Positions 5,966 to 45,649 of a stretch of DNA of 64,000 bases are shown here, piece by piece. A program made the translations under genes and the position numbers. Below the pieces are notes generated by a model. It worked only from the letters and a program-made list of their open reading frames with translations, had not been told where the DNA came from and searched no databases. This DNA comes from Macrostomum lignano (Eukaryota), in the NCBI GenBank assembly GCA_002269645.1, contig NIVC01001131.1, forward strand, positions 124,001 through 188,000. Direction: 5' to 3'. Positions within the stretch are counted from its first letter, which is position 1, and the number at the start of each line of letters is the position of its first letter.

Positions 5966-6009
5966 AGTAGCTAGTGCAACAATTTCCTTAGCTTTATAAT
6001 GGTTCCATT

Positions 6010-29265: not shown

Positions 29266-29568
29266 GAAGAGGATTTTAAGATTGTTTAACATGTAGATCT
29301 AGCGGAAAAGTAGCTGTTTTCTCATTCATTATAGTTAATTGAATTAAATAATCTTACTTCATAGCTACGAGCGTAACATCGGAAGTGATTTATAGGCGCT
29401 GACTACTTGAGATGGTAGTTTTTTAAGAAACTAGAAGTACAAGCCATTAAAATAGAGCAGGCAATACATCCACTCATACATAATTAGAGATAACTGTGCA
29501 CACAGTCCACATTGACCCACGTACATTGGCATATTCATTGTGCTACAACCAACTAAACCCATTGCAAG

Positions 29569-29855
29569 GCTCTCTTGGAAACGCCGGCTTACGTATCTAA
29601 AGTGGTAATTCACACCGCGCCGCTACCTGACGCGGCAATGCAAAGCGCTCTCAACCAATTTATTATTTATGCTGGCGGAAGAACTTGCTATAGTCATAAT
29701 GCAGCATCTTCATTCTCCAGTCGATCGTTTCCGTGCGACACGTTCACCGATTACATCGAGTTGAGCAGCGATAGAAAGGATTCCGTAATGTCCCTGTGCG
29801 AAGTGGAAGTCTATGGAAAGGCGCTTGCGTTCCAGGAACTCGAAAATGGAGCTGC
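29569..29855 (+). CDS. Lectin gene AB copy 1, exon 3 (C-terminal half of F-type lectin/FTP-like domain 1)
   Basis: ag|GCTCTCTTGGAAACG...GCTGC|gtaagt; MSLCEVEVYG signature; paralog of 56820-57106. Exons 1-2 not found upstream in this copy. Confidence 0.8.
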
Positions 29856-31349
29856 GTAAGTTTGGGAAATTGCTCACAATTACGTAAAATAGTGGACCAA
29901 GGATGACTAACGTTTTTAGTATTAGCACATACTTTGTAGTATTGCGAAAATAATTGAGGCGTGAAACGCGGTGGTTCGTTTGCTTTAATTTTTCTTTAAT
30001 TGTTTTCCGTATGGAAAAGAAGAGAGACTTGAGTAATTGCGTGTTAGGGTGCTGTATATTTATATACGTGTTGAAAGAACATTCCGGAATCCGGAAAGTT
30101 CGAGAAGCAGTTTCAAGAAGGGGGTGCGCGGGAGTTCAAAATACCAAATATAGAAAGTGTGTGTTTACGCGGAAGTTTCTAGAATATAAGTATTGTACTT
30201 ACTGTACGCTATCTTATACCGTATACACGCGTTGTTTAGTTGGAGAACTTTCTAGAATACGAAGATTTAAGCATGTTATAGAATATTATAGAAAATAGAA
30301 ATACGCTACAATACTTATAATATAGTAAATACGCTACAACTACACCATTTCTGTATATAATCTTTACGAAGTTGAAGTAACACTCGGCACAAGAACGTGT
30401 ATCGCTTTTTATATTGATAGATTCACACTTTCTTTGAGTTTGATTCACATTCACACTATTAGAGCTTTTTCAAGAAAGTCTACTGAGGGCGCATAAATGA
30501 CAGGAAAGTTTATGTTGTTCCTATCTACCTCGTACCTAGGGTTTTTTTCTTTCTTGTCTGTTTTTTGTCAATCAAAATTCGCATATAGTGAGACGTCTAC
30601 CGGTTTTAAAGTCGATGGATATGCAACGATGAACAGGTAAATTTATGCACAGCCATTTTGATCGCAGATCAGTATTAAATAGTTAATACTGTTTGAAGGG
30701 CTCCTTGTTTTGGTTGTTTATATAAACTTTCAACTTCGAATTCGTCAAAAACTAGTTATAATTCGACGAAGTGAGTGAAATAGGTCACTTTTTATATACT
30801 CGAAGCCATGGGTGTGTATTAAAATGTAAAAATGAATGCACAGCGAAAAATGGAATGCAGATAAACCAAAAAAAAAACTGAAGAACCGTTCCCTAAGTAA
30901 GTCAACGCTAGTCGAAATGATAAGTCTGTAGTATTTTGACACGAAGCATCAATCAAAAATGTCAGTGTAGGTCAAGCAGTGTGGGCTGTAGCGGAATTAC
31001 TATTGTTACTCTACAACTAGACATTACGAGCTGCTCCACCATATAGCACTAGGATTAGCTGCGTGCATGCCTGACGAACTCGAAGTTGAAAAATCATTTA
31101 ACACTGCTTAGCTTAACAATACTACCACAGAAAATAATAGTAATTGCCACAATTGTTTAGTCACCCAGAGGCAATTCCTTCGGCGACATCGTTCCACAAC
31201 CAACGGTGAGGGAATCCTGTCCTGAGCAAGCGAACCAATACACTCACTACACTCACCAATACTTCATAAACACGCTCGTACAGAGTGTACGGCAAATTAT
31301 CAGTGTATATAGTTACGAGCGTATATATATTTTTTTGCACTCTAACATA

Positions 31350-31710
31350 AGTAGTAGGAAAGTGGTACCCTCTACCGCCATCGCACGGGATTGGCCGGGG
31401 CACCCGGCCAATGAGAGGAGAGCTAGGGCCCTTAAAGACGCCTACCCCGACCCCAGACCCACCACCGCCACGCACCCACCCCCGACCCAAGACCCAACAC
31501 CGCCACGCACCACCCCGACCCAAACCGGGCCCCCCAAAGATGCCCACCCCGACCCCAAACCGGGCCCGCCAAAGACGCCCACCCCGACTCCAAACCCACC
31601 ACCGCCGCACCTACCTCCGACCCCAAACCGGGCCCCCCAAAGATGCCCACCCTGACCTCAAACCGGGCCCCCTCCTGTCCTGCACCCCATCCCATACCAA
31701 GGCCCCCTAC
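31350..31710 (+). repeat. Left terminal inverted repeat of the Maverick
   Basis: Reverse complement of ~40600-40955. First ~65 nt match, then C-rich internal subrepeats (cccgaccccaaacc) that differ in number and order between the ends. Confidence 0.9.
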
Positions 31711-32173
31711 TGTCCTGCGCCTTGCTCCATCCCATATAGCAAGGTCCTTCTATCCTGTACTCTAACCAAAACCAATTCCGCCCTCCTAATTCCTAAACCT
31801 AGTCTTATTACCTGTCTCACTTACCGCCTTTAAAGCTAGCCAAGGCAAAACCCTCATTCCATGCTTTGGTTGTACTCTATCTTGCTGTGGCGGGTACAGC
31901 GTGAGGTCGTTAGACCTAGAACGCTACTTCTTGGCGGCCAGAGGGCCGCAAGAAGGTCCCGTCACCTCCTGTTACGTTGATGACTGAGACTTTGTTAAGG
32001 CCTGAGTTCCTGCGAAAGGACTGCTGTGTGGGAGTTGGATTCGGGGTTCGGATTGGTTATTGCTATGGAGCGCGAGCTGGTTTCTAAATGGCTGAGTGGT
32101 CCCCGGAAGGGCTCTTGATTTGCCAATAGTTCCTGCCAGAGGGCTGTTGTGTGGGGTTGGATTCGGGGTTCGG

Positions 32174-32231
32174 ATTGGTTATTGCTATGGAGCAAGAGCT
32201 GGTGTTACTTACCAACTCCCGTCGTATATAA
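32174..32231 (+). promoter_or_regulatory. Putative promoter of the PC4-like ORF (inverted CCAAT 32174-32178, TATATAA 32225-32231)
   Basis: TATA-like box 50 nt upstream of ATG 32281. The ATTGG lies within a ~60 bp element present twice (~32022-32082, ~32142-32205). Confidence 0.55.
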
Positions 32232-32280
32232 TCTCGCGCACAGCCGGAAGGAAAGCTCACAGTTTTTGACAGTGAACAAA

Positions 32281-32928
32281 ATGAACTTTAAGACATTATC
32301 GAACAGATTTCGAATCGGCGTCAGGTCGCACTCGAAGTGCATCAGCATCAGAAAGTGGTACAAATTTGCCGAAGAGTATCGACCAGGTCTGCCTGGCATG
32401 GAGCTCACCATCCACCAGTTTTGCCACTTGGGCAGCCTGAAGGAACGACTGGAAGAGTTTGCAAGAAAGTGTATCGATGCGCAATGCCTTCCTGGCGGCA
32501 ACAGGCAAGTGGTTGTGCAAAATGGCGTAATCACACTCTGGCGCCTTCCAACTGTACTCGGACCGCCGGTGCACCTAAGGCACGCCTTACCGCTTCCTAC
32601 AACACTTTGGCGCGAAGTCTGGGCTCAAAAGCAATGGGTCCTAGACAAAATTGACAAGCGAGAGCCTCCGGTCGAGCCACCGATCGGCAATCCATGGTGG
32701 ATGGGATACCACCCTACGGAGCCTGAAGAGTGTGCAGCATGGGCAGCAAGGCTTACACTCGACCAACTGATGCAAGTACCTGACAGGCAGCCGGCAGAGT
32801 GGGACCACCACTGGGAGGCCTTCCAGGTAGTTCAGGCTGAATTTAGAAAGAGATTTACATTCGAAACTCTGGAAGAGCCACCAAAGCTGAGAAGAACCTA
32901 CAGCCTTCATTCCACCAGCCACCAATGA
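32281..32928 (+). CDS. PC4/Sub1-like (p15 coactivator, ssDNA-binding fold) protein, possibly two repeats, 215 aa
   Basis: ISIRKWYKFAEEYRPGLPGMELTIHQFCHL resembles PC4 IDIREYW...MKPGRKGISL..EQW..L; a weaker second match at GGNRQVVVQNGVITLWRLP...LPLPTTLWREV. ATG 32281 (aaaATG) preferred over the tracked GTG start at 32149. Recalled motif, not searched. Confidence 0.6.
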   Translation: MNFKTLSNRFRIGVRSHSKCISIRKWYKFAEEYRPGLPGMELTIHQFCHLGSLKERLEEFARKCIDAQCLPGGNRQVVVQNGVITLWRLPTVLGPPVHLRHALPLPTTLWREVWAQKQWVLDKIDKREPPVEPPIGNPWWMGYHPTEPEECAAWAARLTLDQLMQVPDRQPAEWDHHWEAFQVVQAEFRKRFTFETLEEPPKLRRTYSLHSTSHQ

Positions 32929-33400
32929 AGCGACGCGCAATGCATGAAGCGACAACTGGTCATTTCGTCAATTAACTTTTTTTAAATATAGTTTTGAACC
33001 ATAGTACTGATTATGCACTGTTGTATATATTGCTTTGTCAATACTGGCCATAATATTGCCCCATCATGCTTTGATTCCGGGCGATAATACTGTTTTTGTA
33101 AATACACGCGACGGGCCTTAATACTGCCCTTCCATTCTTCGTAAACTTTTTTGTGCTAAAACGAGCTTTAAACACGTAATTTTATGCTTTGCAATCCATG
33201 GACCTGCCAATAAAATAAACAAAACAAAAAACATTTCATTTTCGTAAGCATTGTTGTACAAACACTATAGTCGCATTCCCGTTTATTTTTTCTTATCTTT
33301 TGTACACAAAAAATACAGAAGTAAAGTTATAGGAAAAATATTATTATTATTACTCAGTGCATAGGCAGATCTCACTACTACTGTTATGCCGTAGAGGAGC

Positions 33401-34000
33401 TCAATCAGAGTCCAGCAAAGTAGGTTCGGATGCTTGGTCTGCATGCAAAATGCGGGAGAGGGCATCAGCTGCAGTCTGAGCCTCAACCACGCTGCGAGCG
33501 CCAGCTATTATACAACGATACGAATGAAACAAAATCAACTTTACAGAGGCATTAAACTTGAGCACAAGTCCGTTAAACATTTCCGGCTCGTAGGTGGCCC
33601 GATGCGGCCATTTAGACTTGACTTCCCCCAACCGGAGTGGATGCCGACCCGCGGAAAAGGCCGTCACAGAGGTAATAGTCTTGATGCAAATCTGGGGCAG
33701 ACTGGTCAATCGCAAGAAGTCCGCACACAGCCTCACAATATTCTCCGTCTCTGCGAGAGCCTCCTCCATGCTTTTGGCTCCACAGACAGACACTTGTCCG
33801 GTCGGATACACCAGCGCGGTTACTCGATGCTGCCCGCTCTTCATCACCACTGCCAGTGTTCGAGGATGAACCAGGCGATGGCGGATTGTGTGATACTGAG
33901 GCAGATGAAGTGTCAGGAAATTCGCTAGTTGTGGCAGACCCACCCGGGTCGCCAGGTCGGCTCCTGTCACGATGTTTGTCACGCGAATTGTTGCGACCAT
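33401..34000 (-). CDS. TBP: Divergent intronless TATA-binding-protein homolog (core only, 199 aa)
   Basis: Both TBP repeats are recognisable: VTNIVTGADL (cf. LQNIVSTVNL), AVVMK...TALVYPTGQVSVCGAKSMEE (cf. AVIMR...[20 protein letters not shown]), PLRL...YEPEMFNGLV...LILFHSYRCIIAGARS (cf. PIRL...YEPELFPGLI...LLIFVSGKVVLTGAKV). Confidence 0.88.
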   Translation of the reverse strand: MVATIRVTNIVTGADLATRVGLPQLANFLTLHLPQYHTIRHRLVHPRTLAVVMKSGQHRVTALVYPTGQVSVCGAKSMEEALAETENIVRLCADFLRLTSLPQICIKTITSVTAFSAGRHPLRLGEVKSKWPHRATYEPEMFNGLVLKFNASVKLILFHSYRCIIAGARSVVEAQTAADALSRILHADQASEPTLLDSD

Positions 34001-34045
34001 CTTTAGACAATCGAGAGAAACGCCAGTGCCTGCTGCAGATCGCTA

Positions 34046-34081
34046 CTTTTATAGACCCGTAGCCGCGAGGCCGCAGCCAAT
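34046..34081 (-). promoter_or_regulatory. Putative promoter of the TBP-like gene (TATAAAAG 34053-34046; CCAAT 34077-34081)
   Basis: Canonical TATAAAAG about 50 nt upstream of ATG 34000, with a CCAAT box about 25 nt further upstream. Confidence 0.6.
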
Positions 34082-34510
34082 CAGCGTACAGCGCCACTTT
34101 GGCCAGGGCGCAGGTTAGCACGTACTTTGAGGCACTCGGAAAGGCTAGGTGTGCTAGGTCGTAGACAGGCTGCAGCAGCAGACGCGACAGGAACTGGCAC
34201 TTGACATCCCCCTTGCTAAATATCGGGCCTTGCAAGTGAGAGATATCGCTCCAGAGACAAGAGTAGGGTCGGAACCCACTCCTGTCCCAGTCTAGACCGT
34301 GCCGCTTATTGGTGAGCCAGTAGCAGGTTCGTCGCTGTCCTCGATCAAAGAGCTCAAAGCTGTGCGGCGGTCGGTAGCAATAGTAATGAGCCGTCGTTTG
34401 ACCGCATGCAAACTCAACCCATGCAATTTCTTAATCACAAAGTCCTCTGTTTTGTAGAGGTGCGGAAATCCTTCAAAATCATTGACAATCATCTTGGCCA
34501 CTTGATCCAC
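34060..34510 (-). pseudogene. DEDD-like exonuclease ORF, frameshifted near 34430
   Basis: MDQVAKMIVNDFEGF...EDFVIK, then after a 1-nt shift EIAWV...YRPPHSFELF...WLTNKRHGLDW...SKGDVKCQFL...CALAKVALYADWL; resembles a D-x-E exonuclease family I recall from Polintons. The 3' end is approximate. Confidence 0.5.
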
Positions 34511-35080
34511 TTGCCGTATCCTTTCTGAGACTGAGTCTTCTTATAGCCTTGCAGTCGAGGTTTTTTAGGACTGGAATTTTCTTCCCGAGGCTTTTCCAGC
34601 AATTTTGTAGTGTTCAGACCAACTGCAGACAGAGGCACGTGGTTTTCTTGAAGACACGTAACAAACTCATTAATCCCATTCGGTGGCTGAAGGTACTTAG
34701 AGTACGTATCTTTAACTATGAAATGCAGCAGGTCCACGATTTTGAGTTGTACAACGGTTTACCATTGACAGAAACTCCATACGTATCATCTATGCTAATC
34801 GACTTGCACTTTATGGTTATGAAGCTAATCAATGCCTGCAGACGATGATGCCATTTCTGATTCACCGTCAGATATAGCACCTCCTTCCACTGCGGTTCTT
34901 TGTGAATTACTGGAGTTCTTGGGTCGCACTTGCCTGCAGCTGCTGCAGGCAACGCTCGTCCCTATTCTTGCGCAACTGTTTTTCCGCCTCTAGCTCGGGT
35001 TCACAGACTGTCTCCATGCCCCTCTGATTCACAAGTGCCTCATACTGCAACCGGGGTACCAGTATCATTTCCTTGTACAT
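34489..35080 (-). pseudogene. PZ: Polinton PZ-like ORF with two frameshifts (~34910, ~34742)
   Basis: Starts MYKEMILVP. Later segments GVSVNGKPLYNSK(I)VDLLHFIV...PPNGINEFVTCLQENHVPLSAVG match the recalled S-N-I-x-D-L...P-x-G...F...L...N-V-P motif. Confidence 0.5.
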
Positions 35081-35372
35081 GTCTTTTTATACAGGTGAGA
35101 ATCAGAGGAAGACAACGAAGGATGTGCGGGTGTGAGAGATTGCGCCGAGCCTTTTTCACACTTTTGCTTTGTGCAACAAGCCGGAGAGTATTTCGATATC
35201 GCCTGAGTCTCCGCTTCAAGCTATCTTCACAGCCAACTTTTCCTGCTAGTAAGTTGATAATACACTCGACCAAACAGCAAATGGTGCTTTTATTTGCATA
35301 GGTAAGTATGCAGCGACGCAAGGATATAGTGCCCTCACAAAAGACAGTTATTAGTGCAATGTGTTTATTCAT
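35040..35372 (-). CDS. Small conserved Polinton ORF downstream of the ATPase (110 aa, basic)
   Basis: CLVECIINLLAGKV...LRRYRNTLRLVA resembles the recalled E-C-x-x-N-x-L-x-G...L-x-x-Y-K-x-x-L-R small ORF; expected position. Confidence 0.55.
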   Translation of the reverse strand: MNKHIALITVFCEGTISLRRCILTYANKSTICCLVECIINLLAGKVGCEDSLKRRLRRYRNTLRLVAQSKSVKKARRNLSHPHILRCLPLILTCIKRHVQGNDTGTPVAV

Positions 35373-35402
35373 GTTTAACTCAGTGCAGATACTGAGCCAT
35401 TC

Positions 35403-36110
35403 TTATAGATAAACTCGCTGCGGGGCCTCATCGGGGAGAAAATTGGCTCTCAGGCGCAGTTCATGGGGCGAAGCGGGGTGAAAATCAAGCAGCAGATAGC
35501 GCTGATCTCCATCTCGCACCAATCGATCCATCAGTTCTACTAGCAGAGTGCGCCGTTTGGGAAAGCATTGCTGACTTAAAGCTTGGACCGCAGAGGTGTC
35601 TCTGGGGTTATTGAACAACACCATGTAGGTGCAATTTATGCTAATTGTGCGCCACTCTCTGTCTTTGAAAAATAGATTTTGCGTGATGAGAATGACAAAG
35701 CAGGGCTTGTGGTGGGCCTCACCGGTGAACAGATGTCGTAGCTCTCGACTTGCAGCTGCTTCATCCAGTAAATCGTCAATCACAATCAGGTCATGGGGCT
35801 GCAGATCCAAATTCGATAATCCTTCACATACTTGCACTCCTAGCCGCCGCAGAGTCGCGTGGAGTTCCGGCTGCGGGCATCCGTGATACCAAATCATCCG
35901 CTTGGGAGGTTGGTCGAACAGAAGCAGTCGTTGGGACAGCAACCGCAAACAGAATGTTGATTTTCCCGCTCGAGAAGTGCCCGAAACCATCATGCAGCTG
36001 CCCATCCGCAGTCTGGAATCAAACACCTTGCAACTGATTTTTGAGTCTGAGTATGATTGCATCGTTTTGAGCCACAGCTGCCGGGTGCAAAACCTTGATG
36101 AACAAGGCAT
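35403..36110 (-). CDS. ATP: A32/FtsK-like DNA packaging ATPase
   Basis: Walker A GTSRAGKS, Walker B LIVIDD, HHKPCFVILITQNLF and RTISINCTYMVLFNNPRD motifs. The real start is probably downstream of the tracked one. Confidence 0.9.
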   Translation of the reverse strand: MPCSSRFCTRQLWLKTMQSYSDSKISCKVFDSRLRMGSCMMVSGTSRAGKSTFCLRLLSQRLLLFDQPPKRMIWYHGCPQPELHATLRRLGVQVCEGLSNLDLQPHDLIVIDDLLDEAAASRELRHLFTGEAHHKPCFVILITQNLFFKDREWRTISINCTYMVLFNNPRDTSAVQALSQQCFPKRRTLLVELMDRLVRDGDQRYLLLDFHPASPHELRLRANFLPDEAPQRVYL

Positions 36111-36492
36111 TATATGACATTCTCTTATGCAGTCGATGGATCAAGTAAAAAATGCAATACCAGCCGCATAGAGTTGACGAACTGGGCTCAACAGGGCCCG
36201 TATTCCATTGTAGCACCATCCGCGTTGGTTTAGTTTTCTTTAACCAGCTCTTCATATTTTTACTCAAGCCTCCCAAAGAGTTGAAAATTTCACAATGCAC
36301 TTTACTGGTTACTACTCCAGCAATCCAGTGACCGCACTCATCATTCCATGGCTCATACAAAATGAAGCAGCAGGGTCGGCAGGTTGAATCGAAAAATGGT
36401 GTCACTGTTCCAACTGTAAAAATTCCGCAATAGGCATTCCGCACAGATGTGGGGCAGCGAGAAATGAACGCTTCCAACTCTTCGGAATTCAT
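36019..36492 (-). CDS. PRO: Adenain-like cysteine (maturation) protease
   Basis: GHW His motif, FNSLG (cf. FDSYG), EPSSSTLCGWYC (cf. Q-x3-S-x2-CG-x-YC). ATGA overlap with the capsid gene stop. Confidence 0.88.
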   Translation of the reverse strand: MNSEELEAFISRCPTSVRNAYCGIFTVGTVTPFFDSTCRPCCFILYEPWNDECGHWIAGVVTSKVHCEIFNSLGGLSKNMKSWLKKTKPTRMVLQWNTGPVEPSSSTLCGWYCIFYLIHRLHKRMSYNALFIKVLHPAAVAQNDAIILRLKNQLQGV

Positions 36493-37759
36493 GCTCTGCG
36501 ATAATCCAGCAGCACATCTCTCTCTTTAGTGATTTCCATGCATGAATCATACACGCACAAGCAGATGAGTGTGACTGGCTGTGCGAGAGCGTTGGAAAAG
36601 CGAATATCCAGTCGTAGTTGACCCTGCCTATGACCAAACCAGCTGCCTACTTCATCACCACTTGGACTAAGGTCAAAAGCAAGCAGATAGGCACTATCTC
36701 GATATTCATCAAAGCTCATGCAATAATTTCCACCGAGACTGCGAGCAAACTGCAAAAATTCGGATGAGTGCTGCTGCTGTGGTTCTATGGCTGCCCAGTA
36801 ATTGGCTCTCCATTGACAAACAGGCTTAAACTATTCAATCCAAATGCTTGGAACCAAAACGGGTTGTGGTGCAGAGATCCATTGAAAGCTGTCTGGCTGA
36901 CCATTCCAAGGAGCACAAATTTTGGCAGCTGACCATGCGTGATTGAATCGAGACTCTTGTTTCTTGTCCTAACAGAAAATGTGAATGTCTGTAGCTCTCT
37001 TCTATCAAAGTGGTATAGAGCATTACGTTGTGAGAGCCCCTGCTCATGTGCGAGAGCCACTGTTGAGTTTACTCGGAGACGCCTCAAAAGCAGAATAGCA
37101 TTGTCGACTTCAACACGGTATTGAACTCCATTATTGGGTACCATCAACGAAAAAGCGCTGCAATGCCGGGTCAGTTTGACCTGCAGGCTGATTTGGTTTA
37201 GCAGATACTGCCGGATTGAGAAAATGTCTGAAAACAACGGGCCGGCATATTGCACAACAGCAGAAGCCTCATGCAATCTCGCACGATTTGTGAATCCATG
37301 ATTTTGCTCCCCAATGGTGTCACTCTCTCCAGCGGTGTCTGGATAATAACCTGCGGCCGCCAGTTCTTGAAGCTGGTTGGCAGTGCTGCTGGTCAGCACT
37401 TGAAGCATTGCTCGATATGGGTAGAGCTCGTCCCCACCACTCACAACCCGCTGGTTGAGTTTTACAGTGACATCACGAAACAGGCTGGCAAGCGGGAGAT
37501 TCGATAGTCCGACATGGGCATCATCTTCATTAGTCAGCTCTGCATTGTTTATCACACGAGTTATCCGGCAAGTGACTTGCAGCACTGTGGCGTGCAGATC
37601 GGTGTAGTCCTCAGAGGAGGCGTGGCAGTCGAATTCAATCGGTGCATCAGGAGTCGTGAGACTGCCGATGGGATGAAAGTCCATGAAGTGAGACCTATCC
37701 ACTCCAATTTCATGCGTCTTTGGCTCAAACAGGTTGAGCCGTGGATTTGTCCGATACAT
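36489..37759 (-). pseudogene. PY: Double jelly-roll major capsid protein, frameshifted at ~36760-36790
   Basis: LNLFEP, PIEF, YTDL, YPYRAML, GQLPK, FNGSLHHNPFWF in 36785-37759; AFDLSP...GQLRLDIRF...EITKERDVLLDY in 36489-36755 in a different frame. Confidence 0.9.
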
Positions 37760-38030
37760 TATGAGAGTGAATCGAGCACTCGGTTGACTGTTTTGTATGA
37801 TATCTTGCGCTTTTTTGTGGGCACTGGCTTGCTCTTCTTTGGTTTGATTTTTGGCGTTTTCTTATGTTTTTGCTGCGATGGAGGTGGTATGCGGGAAAGG
37901 AGAACTGCATTTTCATGAGTCTCAGGGGGCAGTCAGGATAGCAGCGATGTGGGATATCCGTGCCCATGAGGAAGTTTGAAGCAACTGCCTCGATAAAACT
38001 CGGTCACTTGTCGAATGTCCATGACTCACG
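37760..38030 (-). pseudogene. Small basic (core-like) ORF upstream of the capsid, with an internal stop
   Basis: MDIRQVTEFYRG...GHG..., internal TGA, then Lys-rich KHKKTPKIKPKKSKPVPTKKRKISYK; its TAA overlaps the capsid ATG (TAATG). Confidence 0.45.
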
Positions 38031-38372
38031 CAGCTCTCGGAACTGGGTGTTGCAAAACTCTTTTCCACGGTCGGTCCGAACTGCTCGTAGGCATCGAGGG
38101 TGAGCTCGATTTAGGATCGCTTCGAATCCGGCTGCAACCTCCTCGGCTGTCTTGCGGCGCACCGGCTGAGCCCAGGCAAACTTGCTGAGCACATCGATGC
38201 AGCATAAAATGTATCGCATGCCGCCATTGTACTTGGCGAACAGCAGCATTTCAACAAGGTCCAGTTCCCACTGGTCATCCATGCCCCGCACCACAATCGG
38301 TGCTCGACGAAAGTTTTTGCGTTTATCTCTATGCAGTGCGTAGACATCTTGGTCTTGGAGCCACGTTTTTAC
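38004..38372 (-). pseudogene. INT: Retroviral-like (rve) integrase, truncated at both ends
   Basis: KVKTWLQDQDVYALH...QWELDLVEM...YILCCIDVLSKFAWAQPVRRKT...TDRGKEF; first two catalytic Asp regions present, the E-containing ERFNRT region missing. Confidence 0.9.
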
Positions 38373-38374
38373 CT

Positions 38375-39210
38375 TTAATTGTAAAAACTGGAAATTACTA
38401 GCTAGTGGATAAAACTAAAAGCCTAAGCAGGAATTTTCTAGAAAATCATTGGTTCAGGAGTATATCGTATATGCATACCTGCCCTACACTAAACTTGGGT
38501 CCGTGCTGTTTGTGAAACTCTTGTTTTAATGCCTGATAGCCGCCATAGCTGCCCGGTCTACTGCAGTCAAAATAAATACCTGGCAGAATTTTGGAAATTG
38601 CCTTTTTCTTTTTCATTTTACCAAATTTCTAGTACCTATCATTTTCTTATGCCAAACACCTGGCTTGAAAAAAAAACTACCCACTCCCACCCATTTCTGC
38701 GGATTTAGCGTTTCTAGCCTCTGTTGTGCACGAAAAATCATGCATTTTTGCATAAAATACATACATTTCAATGGGAATTTTTACCCGAATGTGTGCACGA
38801 AAAACCTCGACACTTTGCATACTTTTTAACACTGTGCACGAAAACTTGCATACTTGTGCACAAGATACATGTATTTCAATAGGGATTTTTACTCGAACCT
38901 GTGCATGAAAATTGACGCATGTTGTCAAAAAAGTCACGTCATATTGCGCACTTTTAATCACTGTGCACGAAAACTTACATACTCGTGTACAAAATACATA
39001 CATTTCAATGAGAATTTTAACCCAGAGATGTGCACAAAAATGACTCATTATGGTAAAAATACTAATGTGAAAGAACAATTTTCTCTCCTGCAGTGTATCA
39101 AATATCATTAAGTAAAGGATGGATTTATTATTATTCAAAATATAGTATATTCGCATTAAATTCACATGCATATAGTTAAAAATTAAAGATATGTGAAAAG
39201 AATGTTATTG
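38375..39210. other. AT-rich foreign segment inside the Maverick, with tgtgcacgaaaa subrepeats
   Basis: Abrupt drop in GC and loss of coding signal between the PolB remnant and the integrase remnant. Confidence 0.55.
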
Positions 39211-39214
39211 TGAG

Positions 39215-39966
39215 AAAAAGAGCTTGCTAGTGTCCAGATCGCACTGGCCGACACTGGCTTGTCATCTTGAGAACGTGCACCAGAACTAAATCCCGGTTGA
39301 AAATCTTCTGGTCGCGGAATGCTGACTTGGCCACAGGCTTTGAATTGACCAGTCGGTAGCTCACTTGCTTGCGAACATTCTCGATGGTCTACAGGGAGTT
39401 GTTTAGCGGCCCGTTGTCTTTCTTGAACTCATTCTTGGCCTTTTGCACGACGCTCCATGCGGTAGATAATAAACAGCGGTCGACACGTCAACACACCGAG
39501 TGGTCCTGATTTCCCAGCAACTGGCATTGCGTAGGTACTTCTCTATCCGGTTGAGGATAGTCTGCATGTCGTCAGAGAAGTATTGCTCCTCCTCACTCCG
39601 AATAAGAGAGTGGACCTTGGCAGCAAACCAGGCGGTGTTCTCGGCGGCGCAGCGGCCATTAATGATGCGCTGCGTCAGGACCCCGAGGCGCAGCTGAACC
39701 TTGATGGCGGTTCCTGGCTGAAGTTGATGCTGGGTGATCAAGTCAATGAAAGCTTGACGAGTGCTTTCCAACAAATTCCTCGGGTCGCCGCATGCACTGG
39801 CCCGGTAAAGTCGGGACCTGCCATTAAACGCCTCCTTGATCAGTTGAAAATGAATCGTTGGGGAGTCATCTGACTCAAACAGTGCTGGTATCGCAGGGCA
39901 TACCGCATAGTGCTCCTCAATGCCCCCGGTTACTGATGACTCGCAGAAGTCGCAAGTTATTTGCAT
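39215..39966 (-). pseudogene. POLB: Protein-primed DNA polymerase B remnant (N-terminal domain fused to a motif-B region)
   Basis: N-terminal EAFNG...IKVQLRL...IEKYLRNASCWEI. In another frame KAKNEFKKD...NNSL*TIENVRKQVSYRLV...IFNRDLVLVH, then VGQCDLDTSK, matching the recalled Polinton KNEFEKD..KL.NNS..GKT.ENVR...IF...L.AVH...VG..ILD.SK. Confidence 0.8.
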
Positions 39967-40029
39967 TTTTGTTGTATGTTAAATTTGATATAAAATAAAA
40001 AAATCTATGGGGTCTACTGAGTCCCGCGT

Positions 40030-40200
40030 GCTTTGTTTATAAAGGGTACTGGACCCCGGCTCCTGCGGGTTGTGTTGACCAACCAAATCGTGCATCAGGG
40101 ACCACTCGACCAATAGAATTCCTTCTCGACCAATAGAATTCTTTCCCCACATTATACTCGGAAATCACTTCAAATGCTTGCTCGACCAATAGAATCCCTT
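40030..40200 (-). promoter_or_regulatory. Putative promoter region of PolB (TATAAA ~40036-40042; three ctcgaccaatagaat CCAAT repeats ~40105-40200)
   Basis: Motifs read directly from the sequence; mirror the arrangement at the left end. Confidence 0.4.
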
Positions 40201-40599
40201 CCCCTCTCTACTCGGAAATTCCAAGCAATTGGACCCTCTACCCGTTGACCGATCACATTGAAACTCTGTGTTGCGTGTCACCACATGCGGTAGAGGATAC
40301 TCAACAATGGACACTCATTCACATCTCAAAACTCACCCTTGAACACTCACTTAACTCACCCTTGGACACTCAACAGACACTCAGCTGCCCAACCCGTCAT
40401 CTGGCCTGCTCAACCGGCCTGCCCGACCCCACCCTTGGCCTGATTGACCCCCTCATTCGGCCTGCCCGACCCCACCTCTGTGCCTGCTCGACCCTACTTC
40501 TAGGCTTGCTCGACCCCACTCCTGGGCTTGCCCGACCCCAACCTGGGCTTGCCCGACCCCTTTCTCCGGCCTCCGGTATGGGATGGTGTGCTGGACAGA

Positions 40600-40955
40600 A
40601 AGGGGCCTTGGTATGGGATGGGGTGCAGGACAGGAGGGGGCCCGGTTTGGGGTCGGAGGTAGGTGCGGCGGTGGTGGATTTGGGGTCGGGTGGGCGTCTT
40701 TGGGGGCCCGGTTTGGGGTCGGGGTGGGTGCGTGGTGGTAGTGGGTTTGGGGTTGGGATTGGGTGCGTGGCGGTGGTGGGTTTGGGGGTCTGGATTGGGT
40801 GCGTGGCGGTGTTGGGTTTGGGTCGGGGTGGGTTTGGGGTCGGGGTGGGTTTGGCGTCGGGGTGGGCGTCTTCGGGGGCGCCGTCTCCCCTCATTGGCCG
40901 GGTGCCCCGGCCAATCCCGTGCGATGGCGGTAGAGGGTACCACTTTCCTACTACT
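40600..40955 (-). repeat. Right terminal inverted repeat of the Maverick
   Basis: Reverse complement of the left TIR; ends CTACTACT. Confidence 0.9.
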
Positions 40956-41128
40956 AACATGAAATGAGCACAACTTTTAGAGAATAAGTATAGGATTGAA
41001 TCTTCGAGTATATATGTATTTGATGCAAAATGAGAATCATTACTCTTCATAGTTTATCATTTCAACGAGTTGCTTTCTAAGATTTGTCGTCTATTTGAAA
41101 CAGTAGACACCCGCAATAATCTTTTTAG

Positions 41129-41559
41129 CGAAATTCCGATCCGCAGTTGCTCAACATCAGTAGACAGACATTTAGGCATCTGTGGATACGCTTTTGACCG
41201 CAACTTTGCCGTATTCAATGGCGAACATGGTAAAAAGTGCCTTGACATCCCGAGCGACAAATCTGCAGAAGGCGCTTGGATGCACGTTTTCTTGAGAGGG
41301 TCGGCCCTTGTAAAGCACGTCAAGCTCTTCAACCGGATGGACAAATGCTGTAAAAATAGTCTGAACCACTTTACTCTTTACATTAGTTACTATAAATGCG
41401 CAGAACACATTGATGCAAATCCATTTGTTACGAAAATCTTTAATTGCATGCGGTTCGGCCATCACGTGAAAGTGGTCTCGGTACCCGGTGCGGGCCTACA
41501 TCTGTGCCAATTGCAGATTTTCGGCTACTTAACATTGCTGCGTCCGACTGAGCTACAAA
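41129..41559 (+). CDS. Lectin gene AB copy 1, exon 4 (FTLD-like domain 2)
   Basis: ctttttag|C GAA ATT (phase 2, fits exon 3) to CAA A|gtgagt; AFDRN...C...W...V...NRMDKCC...LHLCQLQIFG. Confidence 0.8.
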
Positions 41560-41834
41560 GTGAGTTCTGCTTTACAAGTAGCTCGTGTTTTGCATGTGTC
41601 GCAGAGTATGGTGCGGATCCACAACTGGACTCTTGGGGCTTGGGGAAAAGCGCCCTTACAGGGTAGAGACCTCTTACAGAAAAGTGTCAACTTATTTAAG
41701 GTTGACCAGTCTAACTGCGGTCTCAGTGATGGCAAACAAGCGCAGACATTTACATTTATTCAGTATTTAATTAATTAAGTAAAACAAAGTTTTTATTTGT
41801 TATTTTATGATATCCAAACTAACTTCCCAATCAG

Positions 41835-42112
41835 AATATCTAGGGTGCTACAAGGACAATCCAAAGCAGCCGGACCTTGAGCAATTGGTATCGCTAACGT
41901 TTATGTCGATTTCAAAATGCCATAGGATGTGTAAACGCCTAAACAAGCTCTATTTTGGACTGCAAAATGGTCGACTGTGCTATTGCGGCAACAAGTTTGG
42001 CAGATATGGCGAATCAAAGGAACCGCAAGCCTGCGATAAACGGTGCATCTATAGCAAGTCCAAACGGTGCGGCGGTCACTATCAGAATAGCGTCTACGAG
42101 ATTATTCTGTAA
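41835..42112 (+). CDS. Lectin gene AB copy 1, exon 5 (WSC domain, stop)
   Basis: ccaatcag|AA TAT (phase 1); YLGCY.D...C...C...YFGLQNG..CYCG...C...C...CGG..QNSVY. Confidence 0.88.
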
Positions 42113-42964
42113 ATTAGCAGCTATAATTTTTTCCTCTATTTTTATTTTTGAGAGTGTGTCGGTCCTTAACAGAAGAGTACCAAGCTAACATAGAGAGCCA
42201 ATATAGCTAATAGCTAAGCTGAAGCACAAAATCCCAAATCCTCGGGCTTCTAATTTTCGACCATAAGCCAAATTATACAACTAGAAATGATCGCATGGTT
42301 GCTGATTTATAATGAGTATATATATATATATATATGATTATGATACAATATACATATAATATATATGCGATTTGAAAGCAACTAGCTGTTTATGAACGTG
42401 CCACAGAGAATGGATTTCGGCTTCCGCTTTAATACTAGTAGCAGTATTGGCTCTCTATATGTTAGATCCCGATACTATTTGTCCGGACAGTGATGTTTTA
42501 TTTTTGAGGCAAAACATACCTGCAATTAATAACTCGAAACAGCTGTAGGTTAACAGAAAATTCTGTACTCTTATTAATGGCATTTGCTTACTGGAGATTA
42601 TAAGTGAGCGGTCATTTTTTATTTAAATTCTGTATTATTCACTGTCTTCCCACGGTGTCCCATGACCTGCCTCCATGTACATTTATTTATAAAGTGCTCA
42701 TTATCATTAAAACAAAAATAATTTGTGACTAAGCACTACAGTCAGTTAAATAAATTTCTTTCCTAAGAGTTTCTAACTGGGCAACACTTCGTAAATGTAC
42801 TTTCATTTTTAGTAGTACATACTGTACGTCTGAATGTGACTTTGAAAGTACACAAAAACTTGGTGATCTCTCAGTTCTTTGTAAGGTTTTTAAAATAAAT
42901 AAATTAAAACAAGATGTTATAGTTTCCTTTCTTTTTTATTCATAATAATATTAATAATAATTTA

Positions 42965-43250
42965 TTAGACCTGCCCTAATAACCAGATGTGCAACCGACA
43001 GCTCAGCCGCAGCTATTGCGCGGCGCATCTGAAGGCTGCGTACGGCTGTTCAGTCCAAGAACTGGGGGGGGGGGCGCCCCACACACCCTCAATTACCCCA
43101 GCTAATGCTGGCACCCATTTTACAGCTGGGTGAACCGAAGCAATGCGGAGTTAAGTTTCTTGCCCAATGACAAATTGTTTCAGTGGGGATCGGGAATCGA
43201 ATCGTGTTTAAGTCGTGAGTCCTACGCTCTAACCACTAGGCTACAACCCC
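42965..43250 (-). mobile_element. tRNA-derived SINE with CORE-like central domain
   Basis: Head ggggttgtagcctagtggttagagcg (A box), degraded B box, ttgggcaagaaacttaac...ctgtaaaatggg core; four copies in the window. Confidence 0.75.
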
Positions 43251-43738
43251 GTTTTATTGAAGAATTGTATAGTAATACCGACAGGTGATCCAGTCGAAAA
43301 ATTTAACAATTTTAAACCGTGTGTGAAGTACATCGATTAATTGTTAATTTTGAGTGCCGGCGTTCTATGTTCGAACAGATTTATACTTCATTCTGAAATA
43401 GCTGCACTAGCTGGGAATTGTACAAATATGAAAATTCGACAACTCTGTAGGACACAAGGATTTTAGCCGAGTAAACAATGAAAAAAGATTGCTAAAACGA
43501 ATTAAAATGTTATTTAAAACTTTGCGGGTTTTTGGTTTTAACAGTTTAATCCACCCACTTGTATGTGAAAGTAAGAGGAGTTTTTTGGAGTTATCCAAGT
43601 AATGGACGGAGTTGTCATTGAATATATGGATATCTTCAATAACACCCAGATATTCAAACTCTAAAGAATTTATTAAATTAGATTCAAAGGCTTGATACAC
43701 TACCTTTTTAATGTCTTCGCAGCAGGAGACAGTCTTTA

Positions 43739-45579: not shown

Positions 45580-45649
45580 GTGAGTTAAAAACGAGCTTGA
45601 TCATCTGTGGCTAAGGTGGTTAATTTAGGCGAGCTTGAGTCTTTAGATT

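What the first reader, a model, noticed from the sequence alone, without database searches (positions are those of the whole stretch)
32281..34000. Maverick carries its own transcription module: divergent TBP homolog plus PC4-like protein
Seen: inside the TIRs, next to the left end, are two convergent, intronless, open ORFs. One has both repeats of the TBP saddle; the other matches the PC4/Sub1 fold, possibly twice. Established: the canonical Polinton set is PolB, INT, ATPase, protease, capsids and PZ; TBP nucleates RNA polymerase II preinitiation and PC4 is a general coactivator and ssDNA-binding protein; TBP-like genes are known in some large DNA viruses. Inference: this lineage encodes factors that redirect host polymerase II to element promoters or compete with host TBP. 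I do not recall TBP as a standard Polinton gene, but cannot exclude earlier reports.
Basis: partly seen in the sequence, partly recalled or inferred. Interest (0 to 1): 0.92.

Follow-up and report, generated by a model that had tools for sequence, protein, structure and literature searches.

The report
Flatworm Maverick carrying its own TBP
A defective copy of a virus-like Maverick transposon in a Macrostomum flatworm genome carries a very divergent but complete TATA-binding-protein gene and a probable PC4-like gene, each with its own TATA-box promoter, so this lineage of small nuclear DNA elements probably brings part of its own transcription-initiation machinery.

Summary
Window 31350-40955 is a discrete Maverick/Polinton insertion. 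It has about 370-nt TIRs, a 6-bp target-site duplication and a paralogous empty site in the same window. Next to its left end lie two convergent, intronless open ORFs.

The minus-strand ORF (33401-34000, 199 aa) is a bona fide two-repeat TBP: Pfam 72.8 bits, AF2 pLDDT 84, and the top 44 PDB fold hits are all TBPs. It is only 22-30% identical to cellular TBPs.

It is not a one-off retrocopy. It sits in the same syntenic slot in a second Macrostomum lignano copy (96% identical), in a divergent second M. lignano Maverick lineage, and in an intact metagenomic relative. It evolves under purifying selection.

The plus-strand ORF (32281-32928) has one N-terminal PC4/Sub1-like domain. This match is consistent across methods but below the Pfam threshold. 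A second PC4 repeat is not supported.

Both genes have conserved TATA boxes about 50 nt upstream; the packed capsid/packaging genes have none. The window copy is non-autonomous: most of PolB is lost and several genes are broken.

The function is inferred, not shown. The likeliest is an element-specific initiation factor using host Pol II, analogous to herpesvirus vTBP. TBP homologues were previously noted only in passing in some MELD viruses.

The parts
31344..31349 (.). Left copy of the 6-bp target-site duplication (AACATA)
   Evidence: The paralogous empty site near 58239 has a single AACAAA. The copy in L010 has a perfect 6-bp TSD.
31350..31718 (.). Left terminal inverted repeat. The terminus starts AGTAGTAGGAAAG; inward it is built of 17/35/103-nt GC-rich tandem repeats.
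32030..32231 (+). Promoter region of the PC4-like gene. It holds a roughly 120-nt direct repeat containing inverted CCAAT motifs, and a TATATAA box at 32225-32231, 56 nt before the ATG.
   Evidence: A TATA box is also present upstream of the homologues in L010, L005 and L004.
32281..32928 (+). PC4/Sub1-like gene (215 aa). It has an N-terminal PC4-like domain (about residues 4-62), a conserved middle region and an acidic/aromatic C-terminal region. The ORF is open, but one indel relative to copy L010 changes the reading frame of its tail.
32929..33400 (.). AT-rich spacer between the two convergent genes, with a poly(A)-signal hexamer for each strand
   Evidence: read directly from the sequence
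33401..34000 (-). Divergent two-repeat TBP-like gene (199 aa), intact
34047..34082 (-). Core promoter of the TBP gene, embedded in the coding sequence of gene X. TATAAAA lies at 34053-34047 (-53 from the ATG) and an inverted CCAAT box (GATTGGCT) at 34082-34075.
   Evidence: The position is conserved in L010, L011, L001 and L002.
33768..34510 (-). Gene X, unknown function, about 255 aa in the intact relative. It overlaps the first third of TBP in another frame. It is broken here by one frame change, which L010 shares.
34489..35080 (-). Gene of 198-207 aa, unknown function. It is intact in L010 and L011. Here it is broken by 2 frame changes and 1-2 in-frame stops.
35040..35372 (-). Small conserved ORF (110 aa), intact
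35403..36110 (-). Packaging-ATPase-like gene (P-loop), intact
36019..36516 (-). Adenovirus-type cysteine-protease-like gene, read in a single frame
   Evidence: weak C48 hit; the L009 homologue hits Peptidase_C5, E 9.7e-6
36492..37759 (-). Putative major capsid protein gene (426 aa in the intact relative), broken by one frameshift
   Evidence: The capsid assignment rests on position, size and conservation only (searches gave no hits).
38004..38616 (-). Integrase (rve) remnant. About 41% of the gene is left, with one large deletion and one frame change. The same deletion removed the neighbouring 269-aa minor-capsid-like gene.
38617..39402 (.). AT-rich block of degenerate repeats of about 120 nt, shared with copy L010
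39403..39966 (-). ORF of 187 aa, possibly the N-terminal remnant of the protein-primed PolB. The rest of PolB is absent.
   Evidence: weak: E 4e-4, collinear with the N-terminus of the L009 PolB; no other PolB match in the window
40593..40955 (.). Right terminal inverted repeat
40956..40961 (.). Right copy of the target-site duplication (AACATG)

Best explanation
SHOWN. Window 31350-40955 is a recently inserted, non-autonomous copy of a Maverick/Polinton family of the flatworm Macrostomum (M. lignano or a close relative).

This lineage of Mavericks carries, as a conserved gene under purifying selection, a deeply divergent two-repeat TBP paralogue. It sits at the end of the morphogenesis block, in the order ATPase, small ORF, 200-aa gene, gene X, TBP. 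The window's subfamily also has a convergent gene with one PC4/Sub1-like nucleic-acid-binding domain.

TBP and the PC4-like gene each have a host-type core promoter: a TATA box about 50 nt upstream of the ATG, plus inverted CCAAT motifs. The tightly packed, overlapping capsid, protease and ATPase genes have none.

INFERRED MECHANISM.
1. Host TFIID and Pol II transcribe these two genes first.
2. The element's TBP keeps the second-repeat phenylalanine pair and the acidic C-terminal stirrup (YEPEMF) that in cellular TBP contacts TFIIB. In the first repeat it has replaced the phenylalanine pair (T/L and Y). In the second repeat it has replaced the central Asn (IKTIT).
3. It therefore probably binds a non-canonical promoter element on element DNA and recruits host TFIIB and Pol II to the TATA-less genes. 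This would be a minimal element-specific pre-initiation complex, analogous to the vTBP of beta- and gamma-herpesviruses.
4. The PC4-like protein would assist by binding melted or single-stranded DNA at promoters.
For: Identity of TBP: Pfam TBP 72.8 bits with 2 repeats. The fold model matches only TBPs over about 188 columns.

Not a host retrocopy: 22-30% identity to plant, choanoflagellate and stramenopile TBPs, which are 47-62% identical to each other. PDB TBPs reach only E about 1e-9.

It belongs to the element and is conserved:
- A TIR-to-TIR copy in M. lignano contig NIVC01000255.1 (L010) is 96-98% identical, has different flanks and its own 6-bp TSD, and its TBP is intact.
- A third copy lies behind the chimeric UniProt model A0A1I8HX20.
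- A divergent second lineage in M. lignano (L009, TBP 34% identical) has the same synteny.
- The intact metagenomic relative L011 runs integrase, 269-aa gene, MCP, protease, ATPase, 207-aa gene, X, TBP.
- L006/L007 show the same order.

Selection on TBP: pN/pS is 0.31 between the two M. lignano copies (11 synonymous, 10 nonsynonymous changes, binomial p 0.008) and 0.30-0.38 against the 60%-identical relatives (p below 1e-10). The protease, compared the same way, gives 0.11.

Selection on PC4L: pN/pS is 0.32-0.41 among divergent homologues.

Promoters: only 5 TATAWAW sites occur in the 9.6-kb element on both strands. Two of them sit at -53 (TBP) and -56 (PC4L). The chance that at least 2 of 8 genes have one in such a position is about 0.003. 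The TBP box and an inverted CCAAT box are positionally conserved in L010, L011, L001 and L002.

Residue pattern. The roles of these residues in cellular TBP come from established knowledge of TBP-DNA and TBP-TFIIB structures, not from anything tested here.

PC4-like domain.

Functional precedent: herpesvirus vTBP recruits Pol II to late promoters (PMC4893493).
Against: - There are no expression, binding or interaction data.
- No shared motif, and no TATT-type box, was found upstream of the structural genes. K-mer sharing was not above that of random windows, so the proposed target element is unidentified.
- Loss of two of the four Phe residues and of one central Asn could equally mean weak or no sequence-specific DNA binding.
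- The PC4-like gene is missing from the sequenced part of the second lineage. Its adjacency to TBP is shown only for the M. lignano subfamily: in L004 no TBP lies within 675 nt downstream.
- Between the two M. lignano copies, PC4L pN/pS is 0.52 and not significant. One of the two copies carries a frame-changing indel in its tail.
- The PC4 assignment is below Pfam's curated threshold.
- Both characterised copies lack PolB, so an autonomous member of this subfamily has not been seen.
Confidence: 0.55

Rival explanations
1. Decoy or competitor. The element's TBP does not build complexes on element DNA. It titrates host partners of TBP (TFIIB/BRF, NC2, Mot1, TAF1). This would dampen host transcription or silencing, or bias the polymerase supply, and the PC4-like protein would likewise compete with host PC4.
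For: The TFIIB-contact stirrup motif is conserved, while DNA-contact positions are partly replaced. No target motif was found on the element.
Against: The second-repeat Phe pair and the first-repeat Asn/Val of strand S1 are invariant across the whole Maverick clade. That fits retained DNA contact better than a pure protein decoy. There are no data on partners.
Confidence: 0.17
2. Replication role rather than transcription. The PC4-like protein is the element's single-stranded-DNA-binding protein for protein-primed strand-displacement replication, the counterpart of adenovirus DBP. The TBP-like protein is a DNA-bending architectural factor at the repeat-rich TIR origins.
For: PC4-fold proteins act in replication as well as transcription, including the phage T5 PC4-like factor (PMC7549692). 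No other SSB candidate was seen in the element. The PC4-like gene lies next to a TIR, and in L004 also next to TIR-like repeats.
Against: The TIR repeats are GC-rich and not TATA-like. TBP keeps the TFIIB-type stirrup, which has no obvious use in replication. The PC4-like gene is absent from the sequenced part of L009, although PolB is present there.
Confidence: 0.18
3. Nothing functional: chance ORFs, pseudogenes, or a one-off captured host TBP retrocopy in a dead transposon.
For: This copy is defective and several neighbouring genes are broken. The two ORFs are short enough to stay open by chance at 3-4% divergence.
Against: Strong profile and fold matches. Conserved synteny across lineages whose TBPs are only 34-60% identical, with intact ORFs in at least seven independent contigs. 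pN/pS is significantly below 1. Identity to cellular TBPs is 22-30%. The promoters are conserved.
Confidence: 0.03
4. Host-domesticated genes. The TBP-like and PC4-like genes are now host genes retained for a host function, for example germline-specific transcription, and merely sit in old element remnants.
For: In both defective M. lignano copies TBP remains intact, and pN/pS between the copies is below 1.
Against: The copies are young insertions with TSDs at different loci. One paralogous site in the window is empty. The gene is multi-copy and always lies in element context. The intact relative L011 carries it together with all morphogenesis genes.
Confidence: 0.05

Closest known systems
Maverick/Polinton elements of animals (Polintoviricetes; adintoviruses)
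   Same: TIRs, 6-bp TSD and an rve integrase. An adenovirus-type protease, a packaging ATPase and capsid-like genes in one compact block. Protein-primed PolB is present in the related lineage L009.
   Different: The published core and accessory gene sets searched here do not mention TBP or PC4 for animal elements (PMC8097293; main text of PMC8502044). This copy lacks PolB and is non-autonomous. TBP overlaps an upstream gene.
TBP homologues noted in MELD viruses with adintovirus-like genes (Starrett et al. 2021, legends of Figs 5/6; PMC8502044 and bioRxiv 10.1101/697771)
   Same: A mid-sized linear dsDNA virus or element of the same broad group carrying a TBP homologue, described there as a homologue of a host protein.
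   Different: It is mentioned only as a gene label, for viruses from non-animal datasets. No analysis of divergence, conservation, promoters or synteny is given.
Viral TBP-like proteins of beta- and gamma-herpesviruses (EBV BcRF1, KSHV/MHV68 ORF24, HCMV UL87) and their viral pre-initiation complex (PMC4893493)
   Same: This is the closest functional analogue. A nuclear DNA virus makes, from an early gene, its own TBP-fold protein, which directs host Pol II to late promoters lacking a canonical TATA box.
   Different: The herpes proteins are much larger, are barely recognisable as TBP by sequence (about 10% identity), and work with five other viral proteins on TATT boxes. Here the protein is a compact 199-aa TBP with a clear Pfam match. 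No TATT-type box or partner genes were found. It is not a member of that family.
TBP-like proteins of Nucleocytoviricota (e.g. ASFV B263R, PMC5825884; mimivirid, phycodnavirus, marseillevirus and iridovirus proteins)
   Same: All significant viral fold matches to the model are from this group. They are virus-encoded TBP-fold initiation factors.
   Different: Those viruses encode their own RNA polymerase and mostly transcribe in the cytoplasm. Identity to the flatworm protein is 18% or less, lower than its identity to cellular TBPs. The Maverick has no polymerase subunits.
Cellular TBP and its paralogue TBP-like factor (TLF/TRF2/TBPL1)
   Same: A two-repeat saddle and a conserved C-terminal stirrup. 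Like TRF2, it has lost some of the TATA-intercalating phenylalanines.
   Different: 22-30% identity and no N-terminal tail. It is encoded by a mobile element in several copies. Its relationship to TRF2 was not tested because no TRF2 comparator was available from the tools.
PC4/Sub1 transcriptional coactivators and PC4-like ssDNA-binding proteins (PF02229; MoSub1; phage T5 PC4-like; review PMC7549692)
   Same: It shares the motif pattern of the PC4 C-terminal domain: an aromatic pair followed by an R/K-P-G-x-x-G-x-x-L segment. The predicted topology is beta-beta-beta-(beta)-alpha. PC4/Sub1 are the best sequence and fold hits.
   Different: The domain is at the N-terminus, not the C-terminus. 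The score is below Pfam's threshold. It is followed by about 150 residues of conserved sequence with no known relatives and, in relatives, a basic tail.

Membership tests
TBP (PF00352, two-repeat TBP-domain saddle) | Profile match above the curated threshold, covering two tandem repeats | tested here: met
   72.8 bits against a cut-off of 22.9, E 2.1e-20, 2 stretches. All family members hit PF00352.
TBP (PF00352, two-repeat TBP-domain saddle) | Saddle fold of about 180 residues with pseudo-twofold symmetry | tested here: met
   AF2 pLDDT 84. The top 44 PDB hits are all TBPs, about 188 aligned columns, TM 0.65-0.75. The model rests on an alignment of only three sequences.
TBP (PF00352, two-repeat TBP-domain saddle) | Four TATA-intercalating phenylalanines (two per repeat) | tested here: not met
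   Alignments. The second-repeat pair is kept (F142, F158) and is invariant in the clade. The first-repeat positions are T48/L49 and Y65. The central Asn of the second repeat is Thr (IKTIT).
TBP (PF00352, two-repeat TBP-domain saddle) | Acidic C-terminal stirrup that contacts TFIIB-family factors | tested here: met
   YEPEMF aligns with YEPELF of the cellular TBPs P0008, P0010 and P0011. E138, P139, E140 and F142 are (nearly) invariant. The role of the motif comes from established knowledge; binding itself was not tested.
TBP (PF00352, two-repeat TBP-domain saddle) | Sequence-specific binding and bending of TATA DNA; nucleation of a pre-initiation complex | not testable with these tools
   No binding or occupancy data are available.
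Host TBP orthologue or recent retrocopy | High identity to cellular TBP cores | tested here: not met
   22-30% identity to cellular TBPs, which share 47-62% among kingdoms. The exhaustive search finds a gap from 124 bits (family members) to 82 bits or less (everything else).
PC4/Sub1 (PF02229) | Profile match at or above the curated threshold | tested here: not met
   19.1-19.6 bits against a cut-off of 25. However, it is the only family hit for all 4 homologues (best E 7.7e-5). MoSub1 is the best PDB profile hit, E 1.6e-3.
PC4/Sub1 (PF02229) | Curved four-stranded sheet followed by a helix (beta-beta-beta-beta-alpha unit) | tested here: inconclusive
   The model has pLDDT 55 and shows E2-7, E10-17, E20-27 and H44-62. 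The best Foldseek hits are MoSub1/PC4, prob up to 0.93 but E 0.05.
PC4/Sub1 (PF02229) | A second unit in the same chain (type I PC4-like fold) or dimerisation | tested here: inconclusive
   There is no internal sequence repeat (hhalign probability 0.1%). A low-confidence beta-beta-beta...alpha pattern at residues 67-125 is the only hint.
PC4/Sub1 (PF02229) | Single-stranded DNA binding; coactivator function | not testable with these tools
   None.
Maverick/Polinton | Long terminal inverted repeats | tested here: met
   31350-31718 against 40955-40593. The termini are identical in the window and in L010.
Maverick/Polinton | 6-bp target-site duplication | tested here: met
   AACATA/AACATG here, with a single AACAAA at the paralogous empty site. 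L010 has a perfect CATAAG.
Maverick/Polinton | Retrovirus-like (rve) integrase | tested here: met
   Remnant 38004-38616, PF00665 E 2.5e-10. Full length in L011 (372 aa) and nearly full in L010.
Maverick/Polinton | [quoted passage not shown] | tested here: not met
   In this copy there is only a possible N-terminal remnant (E 4e-4), and no other PolB match. It is present in the related M. lignano lineage L009 (PF03175 E 7.7e-14). The copy is therefore a non-autonomous member.
Maverick/Polinton | Adenovirus-type maturation protease and FtsK/A32-type packaging ATPase | tested here: inconclusive
   Protease: a weak C48 hit here, and Peptidase_C5 E 9.7e-6 for the L009 homologue. ATPase: only sub-threshold P-loop AAA hits.
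Maverick/Polinton | Double jelly-roll major and single jelly-roll minor capsid proteins | tested here: inconclusive
   The conserved syntenic 426-aa and 269-aa genes have no Pfam or PDB sequence hits.
Herpesvirus vTBP / viral pre-initiation complex | Large vTBP with partner proteins; TATT-type late promoters | tested here: not met
   No TATT boxes lie upstream of the structural genes and no partner homologues were seen. The resemblance is functional analogy only (PMC4893493).

The most novel reading that the evidence does not exclude
A small (about 15 kb when complete), nuclear, virus-like element of an animal runs an early-to-late transcription switch with its own general-transcription-factor paralogue. 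Host TFIID would fire the TATA-box promoters of the element's TBP and PC4-like genes. Their products would then assemble an element-specific pre-initiation complex with host TFIIB and Pol II on the TATA-less morphogenesis genes. If so, a virus-specific TBP is not a speciality of giant viruses and herpesviruses; it also exists in Polintoviricetes, the group proposed as ancestral to many eukaryotic dsDNA viruses.
Probability: 0.25. Interest if true: 0.8.

Novelty: new variant of a known kind. Interest (0 to 1): 0.62.

Why it matters
Mavericks/Polintons are thought to rely wholly on host transcription. Their known accessory genes concern entry, cell death and cell-cycle control.

A conserved, selected TBP paralogue with its own TATA/CCAAT promoter, in at least two deep flatworm Maverick lineages, suggests that some of these small elements control initiation themselves. 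Giant viruses and herpesviruses do so by other means.

It also gives:
- a compact (199-aa), clearly alignable natural TBP variant with one repeat's DNA-intercalating pair replaced, which is useful for understanding TBP specificity;
- a concrete expression hypothesis that existing Macrostomum transcriptome data could check;
- two database corrections. UniProt A0A1I8HX20 and GenBank PAA54323.1 are artefactual fusions that contain this gene.

Tried and rejected
Searches that found nothing:
- IMG/VR scans for relatives of TBP and of PC4L.
- The metagenome scan gave only distant, ordinary TBPs (24-39% identity; L012-L016 look cellular).
- Rfam found nothing in the window.

Tests that gave no signal:
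- Internal-repeat test of PC4L by hhalign: no signal.
- A promoter motif shared by the structural genes, or herpes-like TATT boxes: nothing above random windows. The conserved block upstream of the MCP gene looks like a small basic ORF rather than a promoter.
- Pfam and PDB sequence searches of the putative capsid genes, gene X and the 200-aa gene: no hits.
- A more distant Maverick contig (L017, ATPase 38% identical) shows no TBP or PC4L. The contig ends about 1 kb after the ATPase, so this is inconclusive.

Rejected interpretations:
- The PC4L fold search was run on a low-confidence model, so it counts only as corroboration.
- P0017 first looked like the host TBP. It turned out to be a second Maverick-type TBP fused to gene X by a frameshift.
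- The long GC-rich ORFs over the TIRs are artefacts of tandem repeats.
Full report
1. WHAT IS AT THE COORDINATES

ORF listing shows a plus-strand ORF whose first ATG is at 32281 and which ends at 32928 (215 aa). It also shows a minus-strand ORF from 34000 to 33401 (199 aa). They converge on a 472-nt AT-rich spacer that contains a poly(A)-signal hexamer for each strand.

The minus-strand protein matches Pfam TBP (PF00352) at E 2.1e-20, 72.8 bits (cut-off 22.9), in two stretches. Against PDB sequences it reaches only E 5e-10 to 1e-6. Eukaryotic and archaeal TBPs score alike.

An AlphaFold2 model built from three family sequences has pLDDT 84 and pTM 0.72. Its 44 best Foldseek PDB matches are all TBPs, aligned over about 188 columns at TM 0.65-0.75 and 20-24% identity. 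Both repeats of the saddle are therefore present.

The plus-strand protein matches Pfam PC4 (PF02229) at E 6.5e-4 to 9e-4, 19-20 bits, below the 25-bit cut-off. Three further lines point the same way:
- Each of its three homologues also hits only PC4 (best E 7.7e-5).
- A profile of the four finds MoSub1 first among PDB sequences, at E 1.6e-3, and human PC4 further down.
- The AF2 model is poor (pLDDT 55), but it has beta-beta-beta-helix at residues 2-62. Its best fold hits are MoSub1 and PC4 (prob 0.93, E 0.05).

I accept one N-terminal PC4-like unit as probable. A second unit is not supported: hhalign of residues 1-67 against 68-128 gives probability 0.1%. A type I PC4-like fold made of two dissimilar units cannot be excluded (PMC7549692).

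2. THE ELEMENT AND ITS HOST

Inverted repeats of about 370 nt lie at 31350-31718 and 40593-40955. They are largely made of 17/35/103-nt GC-rich tandem repeats.

The termini (AGTAGTAGGAAAG...) are flanked by AACATA and AACATG. The window contains a segmental duplication in which 29429-31125 plus 40956-42950 is paralogous to 56687-58093 plus 58239-60344. In that paralogue the site is empty and holds a single AACAAA. This fixes the element at 31350-40955 with a 6-bp target-site duplication.

Read on the minus strand from the right TIR, the element holds:
- a 187-aa ORF that may be the N-terminal remnant of PolB (weak, E 4e-4);
- an AT-rich repeat block;
- an rve integrase remnant (PF00665 E 2.5e-10);
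- a putative major capsid gene;
- an adenovirus-type protease-like gene;
- a P-loop ATPase;
- a 110-aa ORF;
- a gene of about 200 aa;
- gene X;
- TBP.

The PC4-like gene faces TBP from the left end.

The host is Macrostomum lignano or a close relative, on two grounds. First, the exhaustive protein search returned a UniProt model of M. lignano (A0A1I8HX20) that splices together pieces of the 200-aa gene, gene X, TBP (128 of 135 aligned residues identical), the antisense of the PC4-like gene, and an ABCC transporter. Second, M. lignano contig NIVC01000255.1 holds a TIR-to-TIR copy that is 96-98% identical, at a different locus (inside a kinesin gene), with a perfect 6-bp TSD. The lineage is Platyhelminthes, Rhabditophora, Macrostomorpha.

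3. STATE OF THIS COPY (COUNTS ONLY)

The comparison is with the intact relative L011 and with copy L010.
- PolB: all but a possible N-terminal remnant is missing. L010 shares this loss.
- Integrase: about 41% is left, with one large deletion and one frame change.
- The 269-aa minor-capsid-like gene: deleted.
- Major-capsid-like gene: one frameshift.
- The 200-aa gene: two frame changes and one or two stops.
- Gene X: one frame change, shared with L010.
- PC4-like gene: open, but one indel relative to L010 alters the tail. The L010 frame ends in a basic motif like those of P0003 and P0004.
- Protease, ATPase, the 110-aa ORF and TBP: read through in one frame.

L010 has its own, different defects. 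Both copies share the loss of PolB yet sit at different loci with TSDs. This is therefore a non-autonomous subfamily that still transposed.

4. IS THE TBP GENE PART OF THE ELEMENT LINEAGE?

Yes.

The word-indexed search found only two relatives, at 60% identity, on short metagenome contigs. The exhaustive HMM search of 1.84 billion representatives found three proteins below E 1e-30. It then showed a gap down to ordinary TBPs at 82 bits or less.

Signature motifs (YP[ST]GQ, IKT[IV]T) occur only in the family members among the 174 proteins fetched.

The family forms a coherent group, 31-95% identical to one another. It is 22-30% identical to plant, choanoflagellate and stramenopile TBPs, which share 47-62% with each other.

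The contexts agree:
- L011 is a 6.9-kb metagenome contig with every ORF intact. It reads integrase, 269-aa gene, capsid gene (426 aa), protease, ATPase, 207-aa gene, gene X, TBP (225 aa).
- L006 and L007 read ATPase end, small ORF, 215-aa gene, TBP.
- L009 is a second, divergent M. lignano Maverick. It reads capsid gene, protease (Peptidase_C5 E 9.7e-6), ATPase, small ORF, 230-aa gene, X and TBP. These two are fused into GenBank PAA54323.1 by one frameshift. A 1227-aa protein-primed PolB then converges on them (PF03175 E 7.7e-14).

In L011, gene X overlaps the first 284 nt of TBP in another frame. The gene caller had therefore truncated TBP to 126-127 aa in L008 and L011.

Selection on TBP:
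- Window against L010: 11 synonymous and 10 nonsynonymous changes, pN/pS 0.31, binomial p 0.008.
- Against the 60% relatives: pN/pS 0.30-0.38, p below 1e-10.
- For comparison, the protease gives 0.11 and the 110-aa ORF 0.31 between the two copies.

5. THE PC4-LIKE GENE IS LESS GENERAL

Three homologues at about 50% identity exist. One comes from the same ENA sample as a TBP relative. Among these divergent homologues pN/pS is 0.32-0.41.

In L004 the gene lies next to TIR-like repeats, but no TBP lies within 675 nt downstream. No PC4-like gene is found in L009. Between the two M. lignano copies pN/pS is 0.52 and not significant.

Adjacency of the two genes is thus shown only for the M. lignano subfamily, in three copies.

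6. PROMOTERS

The 9.6-kb element has only five TATAWAW sites on both strands. One (TATAAAA) is 53 nt upstream of the TBP ATG, inside gene X. One (TATATAA) is 56 nt upstream of the PC4-like ATG. None lies within 200 nt upstream of the other six minus-strand gene starts examined. The chance of at least two of eight genes having one in a 41-nt window is about 0.003.

The TBP box, TATAAA(A/G), and an inverted CCAAT box about 25 nt further upstream are positionally conserved in L010, L011, L001 and L002. L006 has CATAAAAATA at the same place. The PC4-like homologues in L005 and L004 also have TATA-type boxes.

Because the TBP box coincides with conserved codons of gene X, coding constraint may contribute to its conservation.

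The morphogenesis genes overlap or abut one another. Their upstream regions show no shared motif above random expectation and no TATT-type boxes.

7. RESIDUE PATTERN

The roles of the residues come from established knowledge of TBP-DNA and TBP-TFIIB structures.
- The two phenylalanines of the second repeat (F142, F158) are invariant.
- The stirrup YEPEMF is invariant or nearly so.
- In the first repeat, the Asn and Val of strand S1 are kept (TNIV), but the two phenylalanine positions are T48/L49 and Y65.
- The central Asn of the second repeat is Thr (IKTIT).

This mosaic argues for retained DNA contact with altered specificity and for retained docking of a TFIIB-family factor. It proves neither.

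8. MOST LIKELY MECHANISM AND RIVALS

Shown: a Maverick lineage carries a selected, divergent TBP with a host-type promoter, and one subfamily adds a PC4-like gene with the same kind of promoter.

Inferred: these are early or regulatory genes fired by host TFIID. The TBP paralogue then brings host TFIIB and Pol II to element DNA that lacks canonical TATA boxes, helped by the PC4-like protein. The closest working precedent is the TBP-like protein of beta- and gamma-herpesviruses, which recruits Pol II to late promoters (PMC4893493). All significant viral fold matches to the model come from Nucleocytoviricota, at 18% identity or less.

The rivals are a decoy that titrates host TBP partners, a replication role (a PC4-like SSB plus a DNA-bending protein at the TIR origins), domestication by the host, and non-function. 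The last is excluded. Domestication is made unlikely by the young, multi-locus, TSD-flanked copies and by the empty site.

9. WHAT IS KNOWN

Full-text searches found TBP linked to Polintons or MELD viruses only in figure legends of Starrett et al. [quoted passage not shown]

The vertebrate Maverick survey mentions neither TBP nor PC4. None of 25 recent Polinton, PLV or virophage papers listed contains 'TATA-binding'. Polintovirus-like insertions in rhabditophoran flatworms were noted only in a recent preprint.

I therefore rate this as a new variant of a known kind. The element type is known, and virus-encoded TBPs are known. A conserved TBP paralogue with its own promoter in animal Mavericks appears undescribed in the literature I could search, and so does a PC4-like partner.

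10. LIMITS

- There are no expression or biochemical data.
- The TBP model rests on three sequences and the PC4 model is poor.
- Capsid assignments are positional.
- The source organisms of the metagenome and Logan relatives are unknown.
- No autonomous member of the window's subfamily was seen.
- No TRF2 or host TBP comparator was available, so the origin of the clade is open.

Noticed in passing
window 29429-31125 + 40956-46400 versus 56687-58093 + 58239-64000: A segmental duplication (80-91% identity) lies inside the window. The second copy lacks the Maverick and serves as an empty site. The insertion is therefore younger than the duplication.
   Followed up: yes
window 33768-34000; L011 6072-6355: Gene X and TBP overlap in different frames (233 nt here, 284 nt in the intact relative). 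The TATA and CCAAT boxes of TBP lie inside the X coding sequence. Gene callers therefore truncated TBP to its second half in L008 and L011.
   Followed up: partly
P0006 (UniProt A0A1I8HX20) and P0017 (GenBank PAA54323.1; L009 3032-4111): Two public M. lignano protein models are artefacts. One splices Maverick ORFs (including antisense PC4L) onto an ABCC transporter. The other is gene X fused to a frameshifted TBP.
   Followed up: yes
window 31350-31718, 40416-40955: The TIRs and the adjacent sequence consist of 17/22/35/103-nt GC-rich tandem repeats. These give long spurious ORFs on both strands. L004 has similar repeats upstream of its PC4-like gene.
   Followed up: partly
window 38617-39402; L010 about 5551-6825: An AT-rich block of degenerate repeats of about 120 nt lies between the PolB remnant and the integrase. 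Both M. lignano copies share it. It probably marks the rearrangement that removed PolB.
   Followed up: partly
window 37760-37990; L010 8513-8743; L011 2025-2255: A conserved stretch upstream of the capsid gene appears to encode a small, very basic protein, possibly a core or pX-like protein. Gene callers did not annotate it on the right strand.
   Followed up: no
window 33768-34510 and L010 11489-12387: Both M. lignano copies show the same single frame change in gene X relative to L011. This could be an inherited defect or a genuine feature of the subfamily.
   Followed up: no
window 41070-42112 and 58371-59600: Host-gene exons lie right of the element: a WSC-domain ORF (Pfam E 2.9e-17) preceded by an ORF with a weak galactose-binding-like match. 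They are duplicated with the segment.
   Followed up: partly
window 42959-44027 and 60393-61482: Foldback or MITE-like structures of about 1 kb, with 100-250-nt inverted arms, are present in both paralogous segments.
   Followed up: no
window 45645-46385, 63494-63955, 44797-45072, 62601-62921, 61941-62246, 54201-54406, 55489-55987: Several satellite arrays: 14-nt (AGAATGGCAGATTC)n with 32-52 copies, 28-31-nt arrays, and (GAGAG)n.
   Followed up: no
window 1-30000: There is a strong strand asymmetry (GC skew down to -0.5) with C/T-rich low-complexity repeats. The skew ends near the element.
   Followed up: no
L009 4672-8355: The PolB of the second M. lignano Maverick lineage carries an Endonuclease VII-like zinc motif (PF02945 E 7e-7) before the polymerase domain, and a long C-terminal polyglutamine run.
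   Followed up: no
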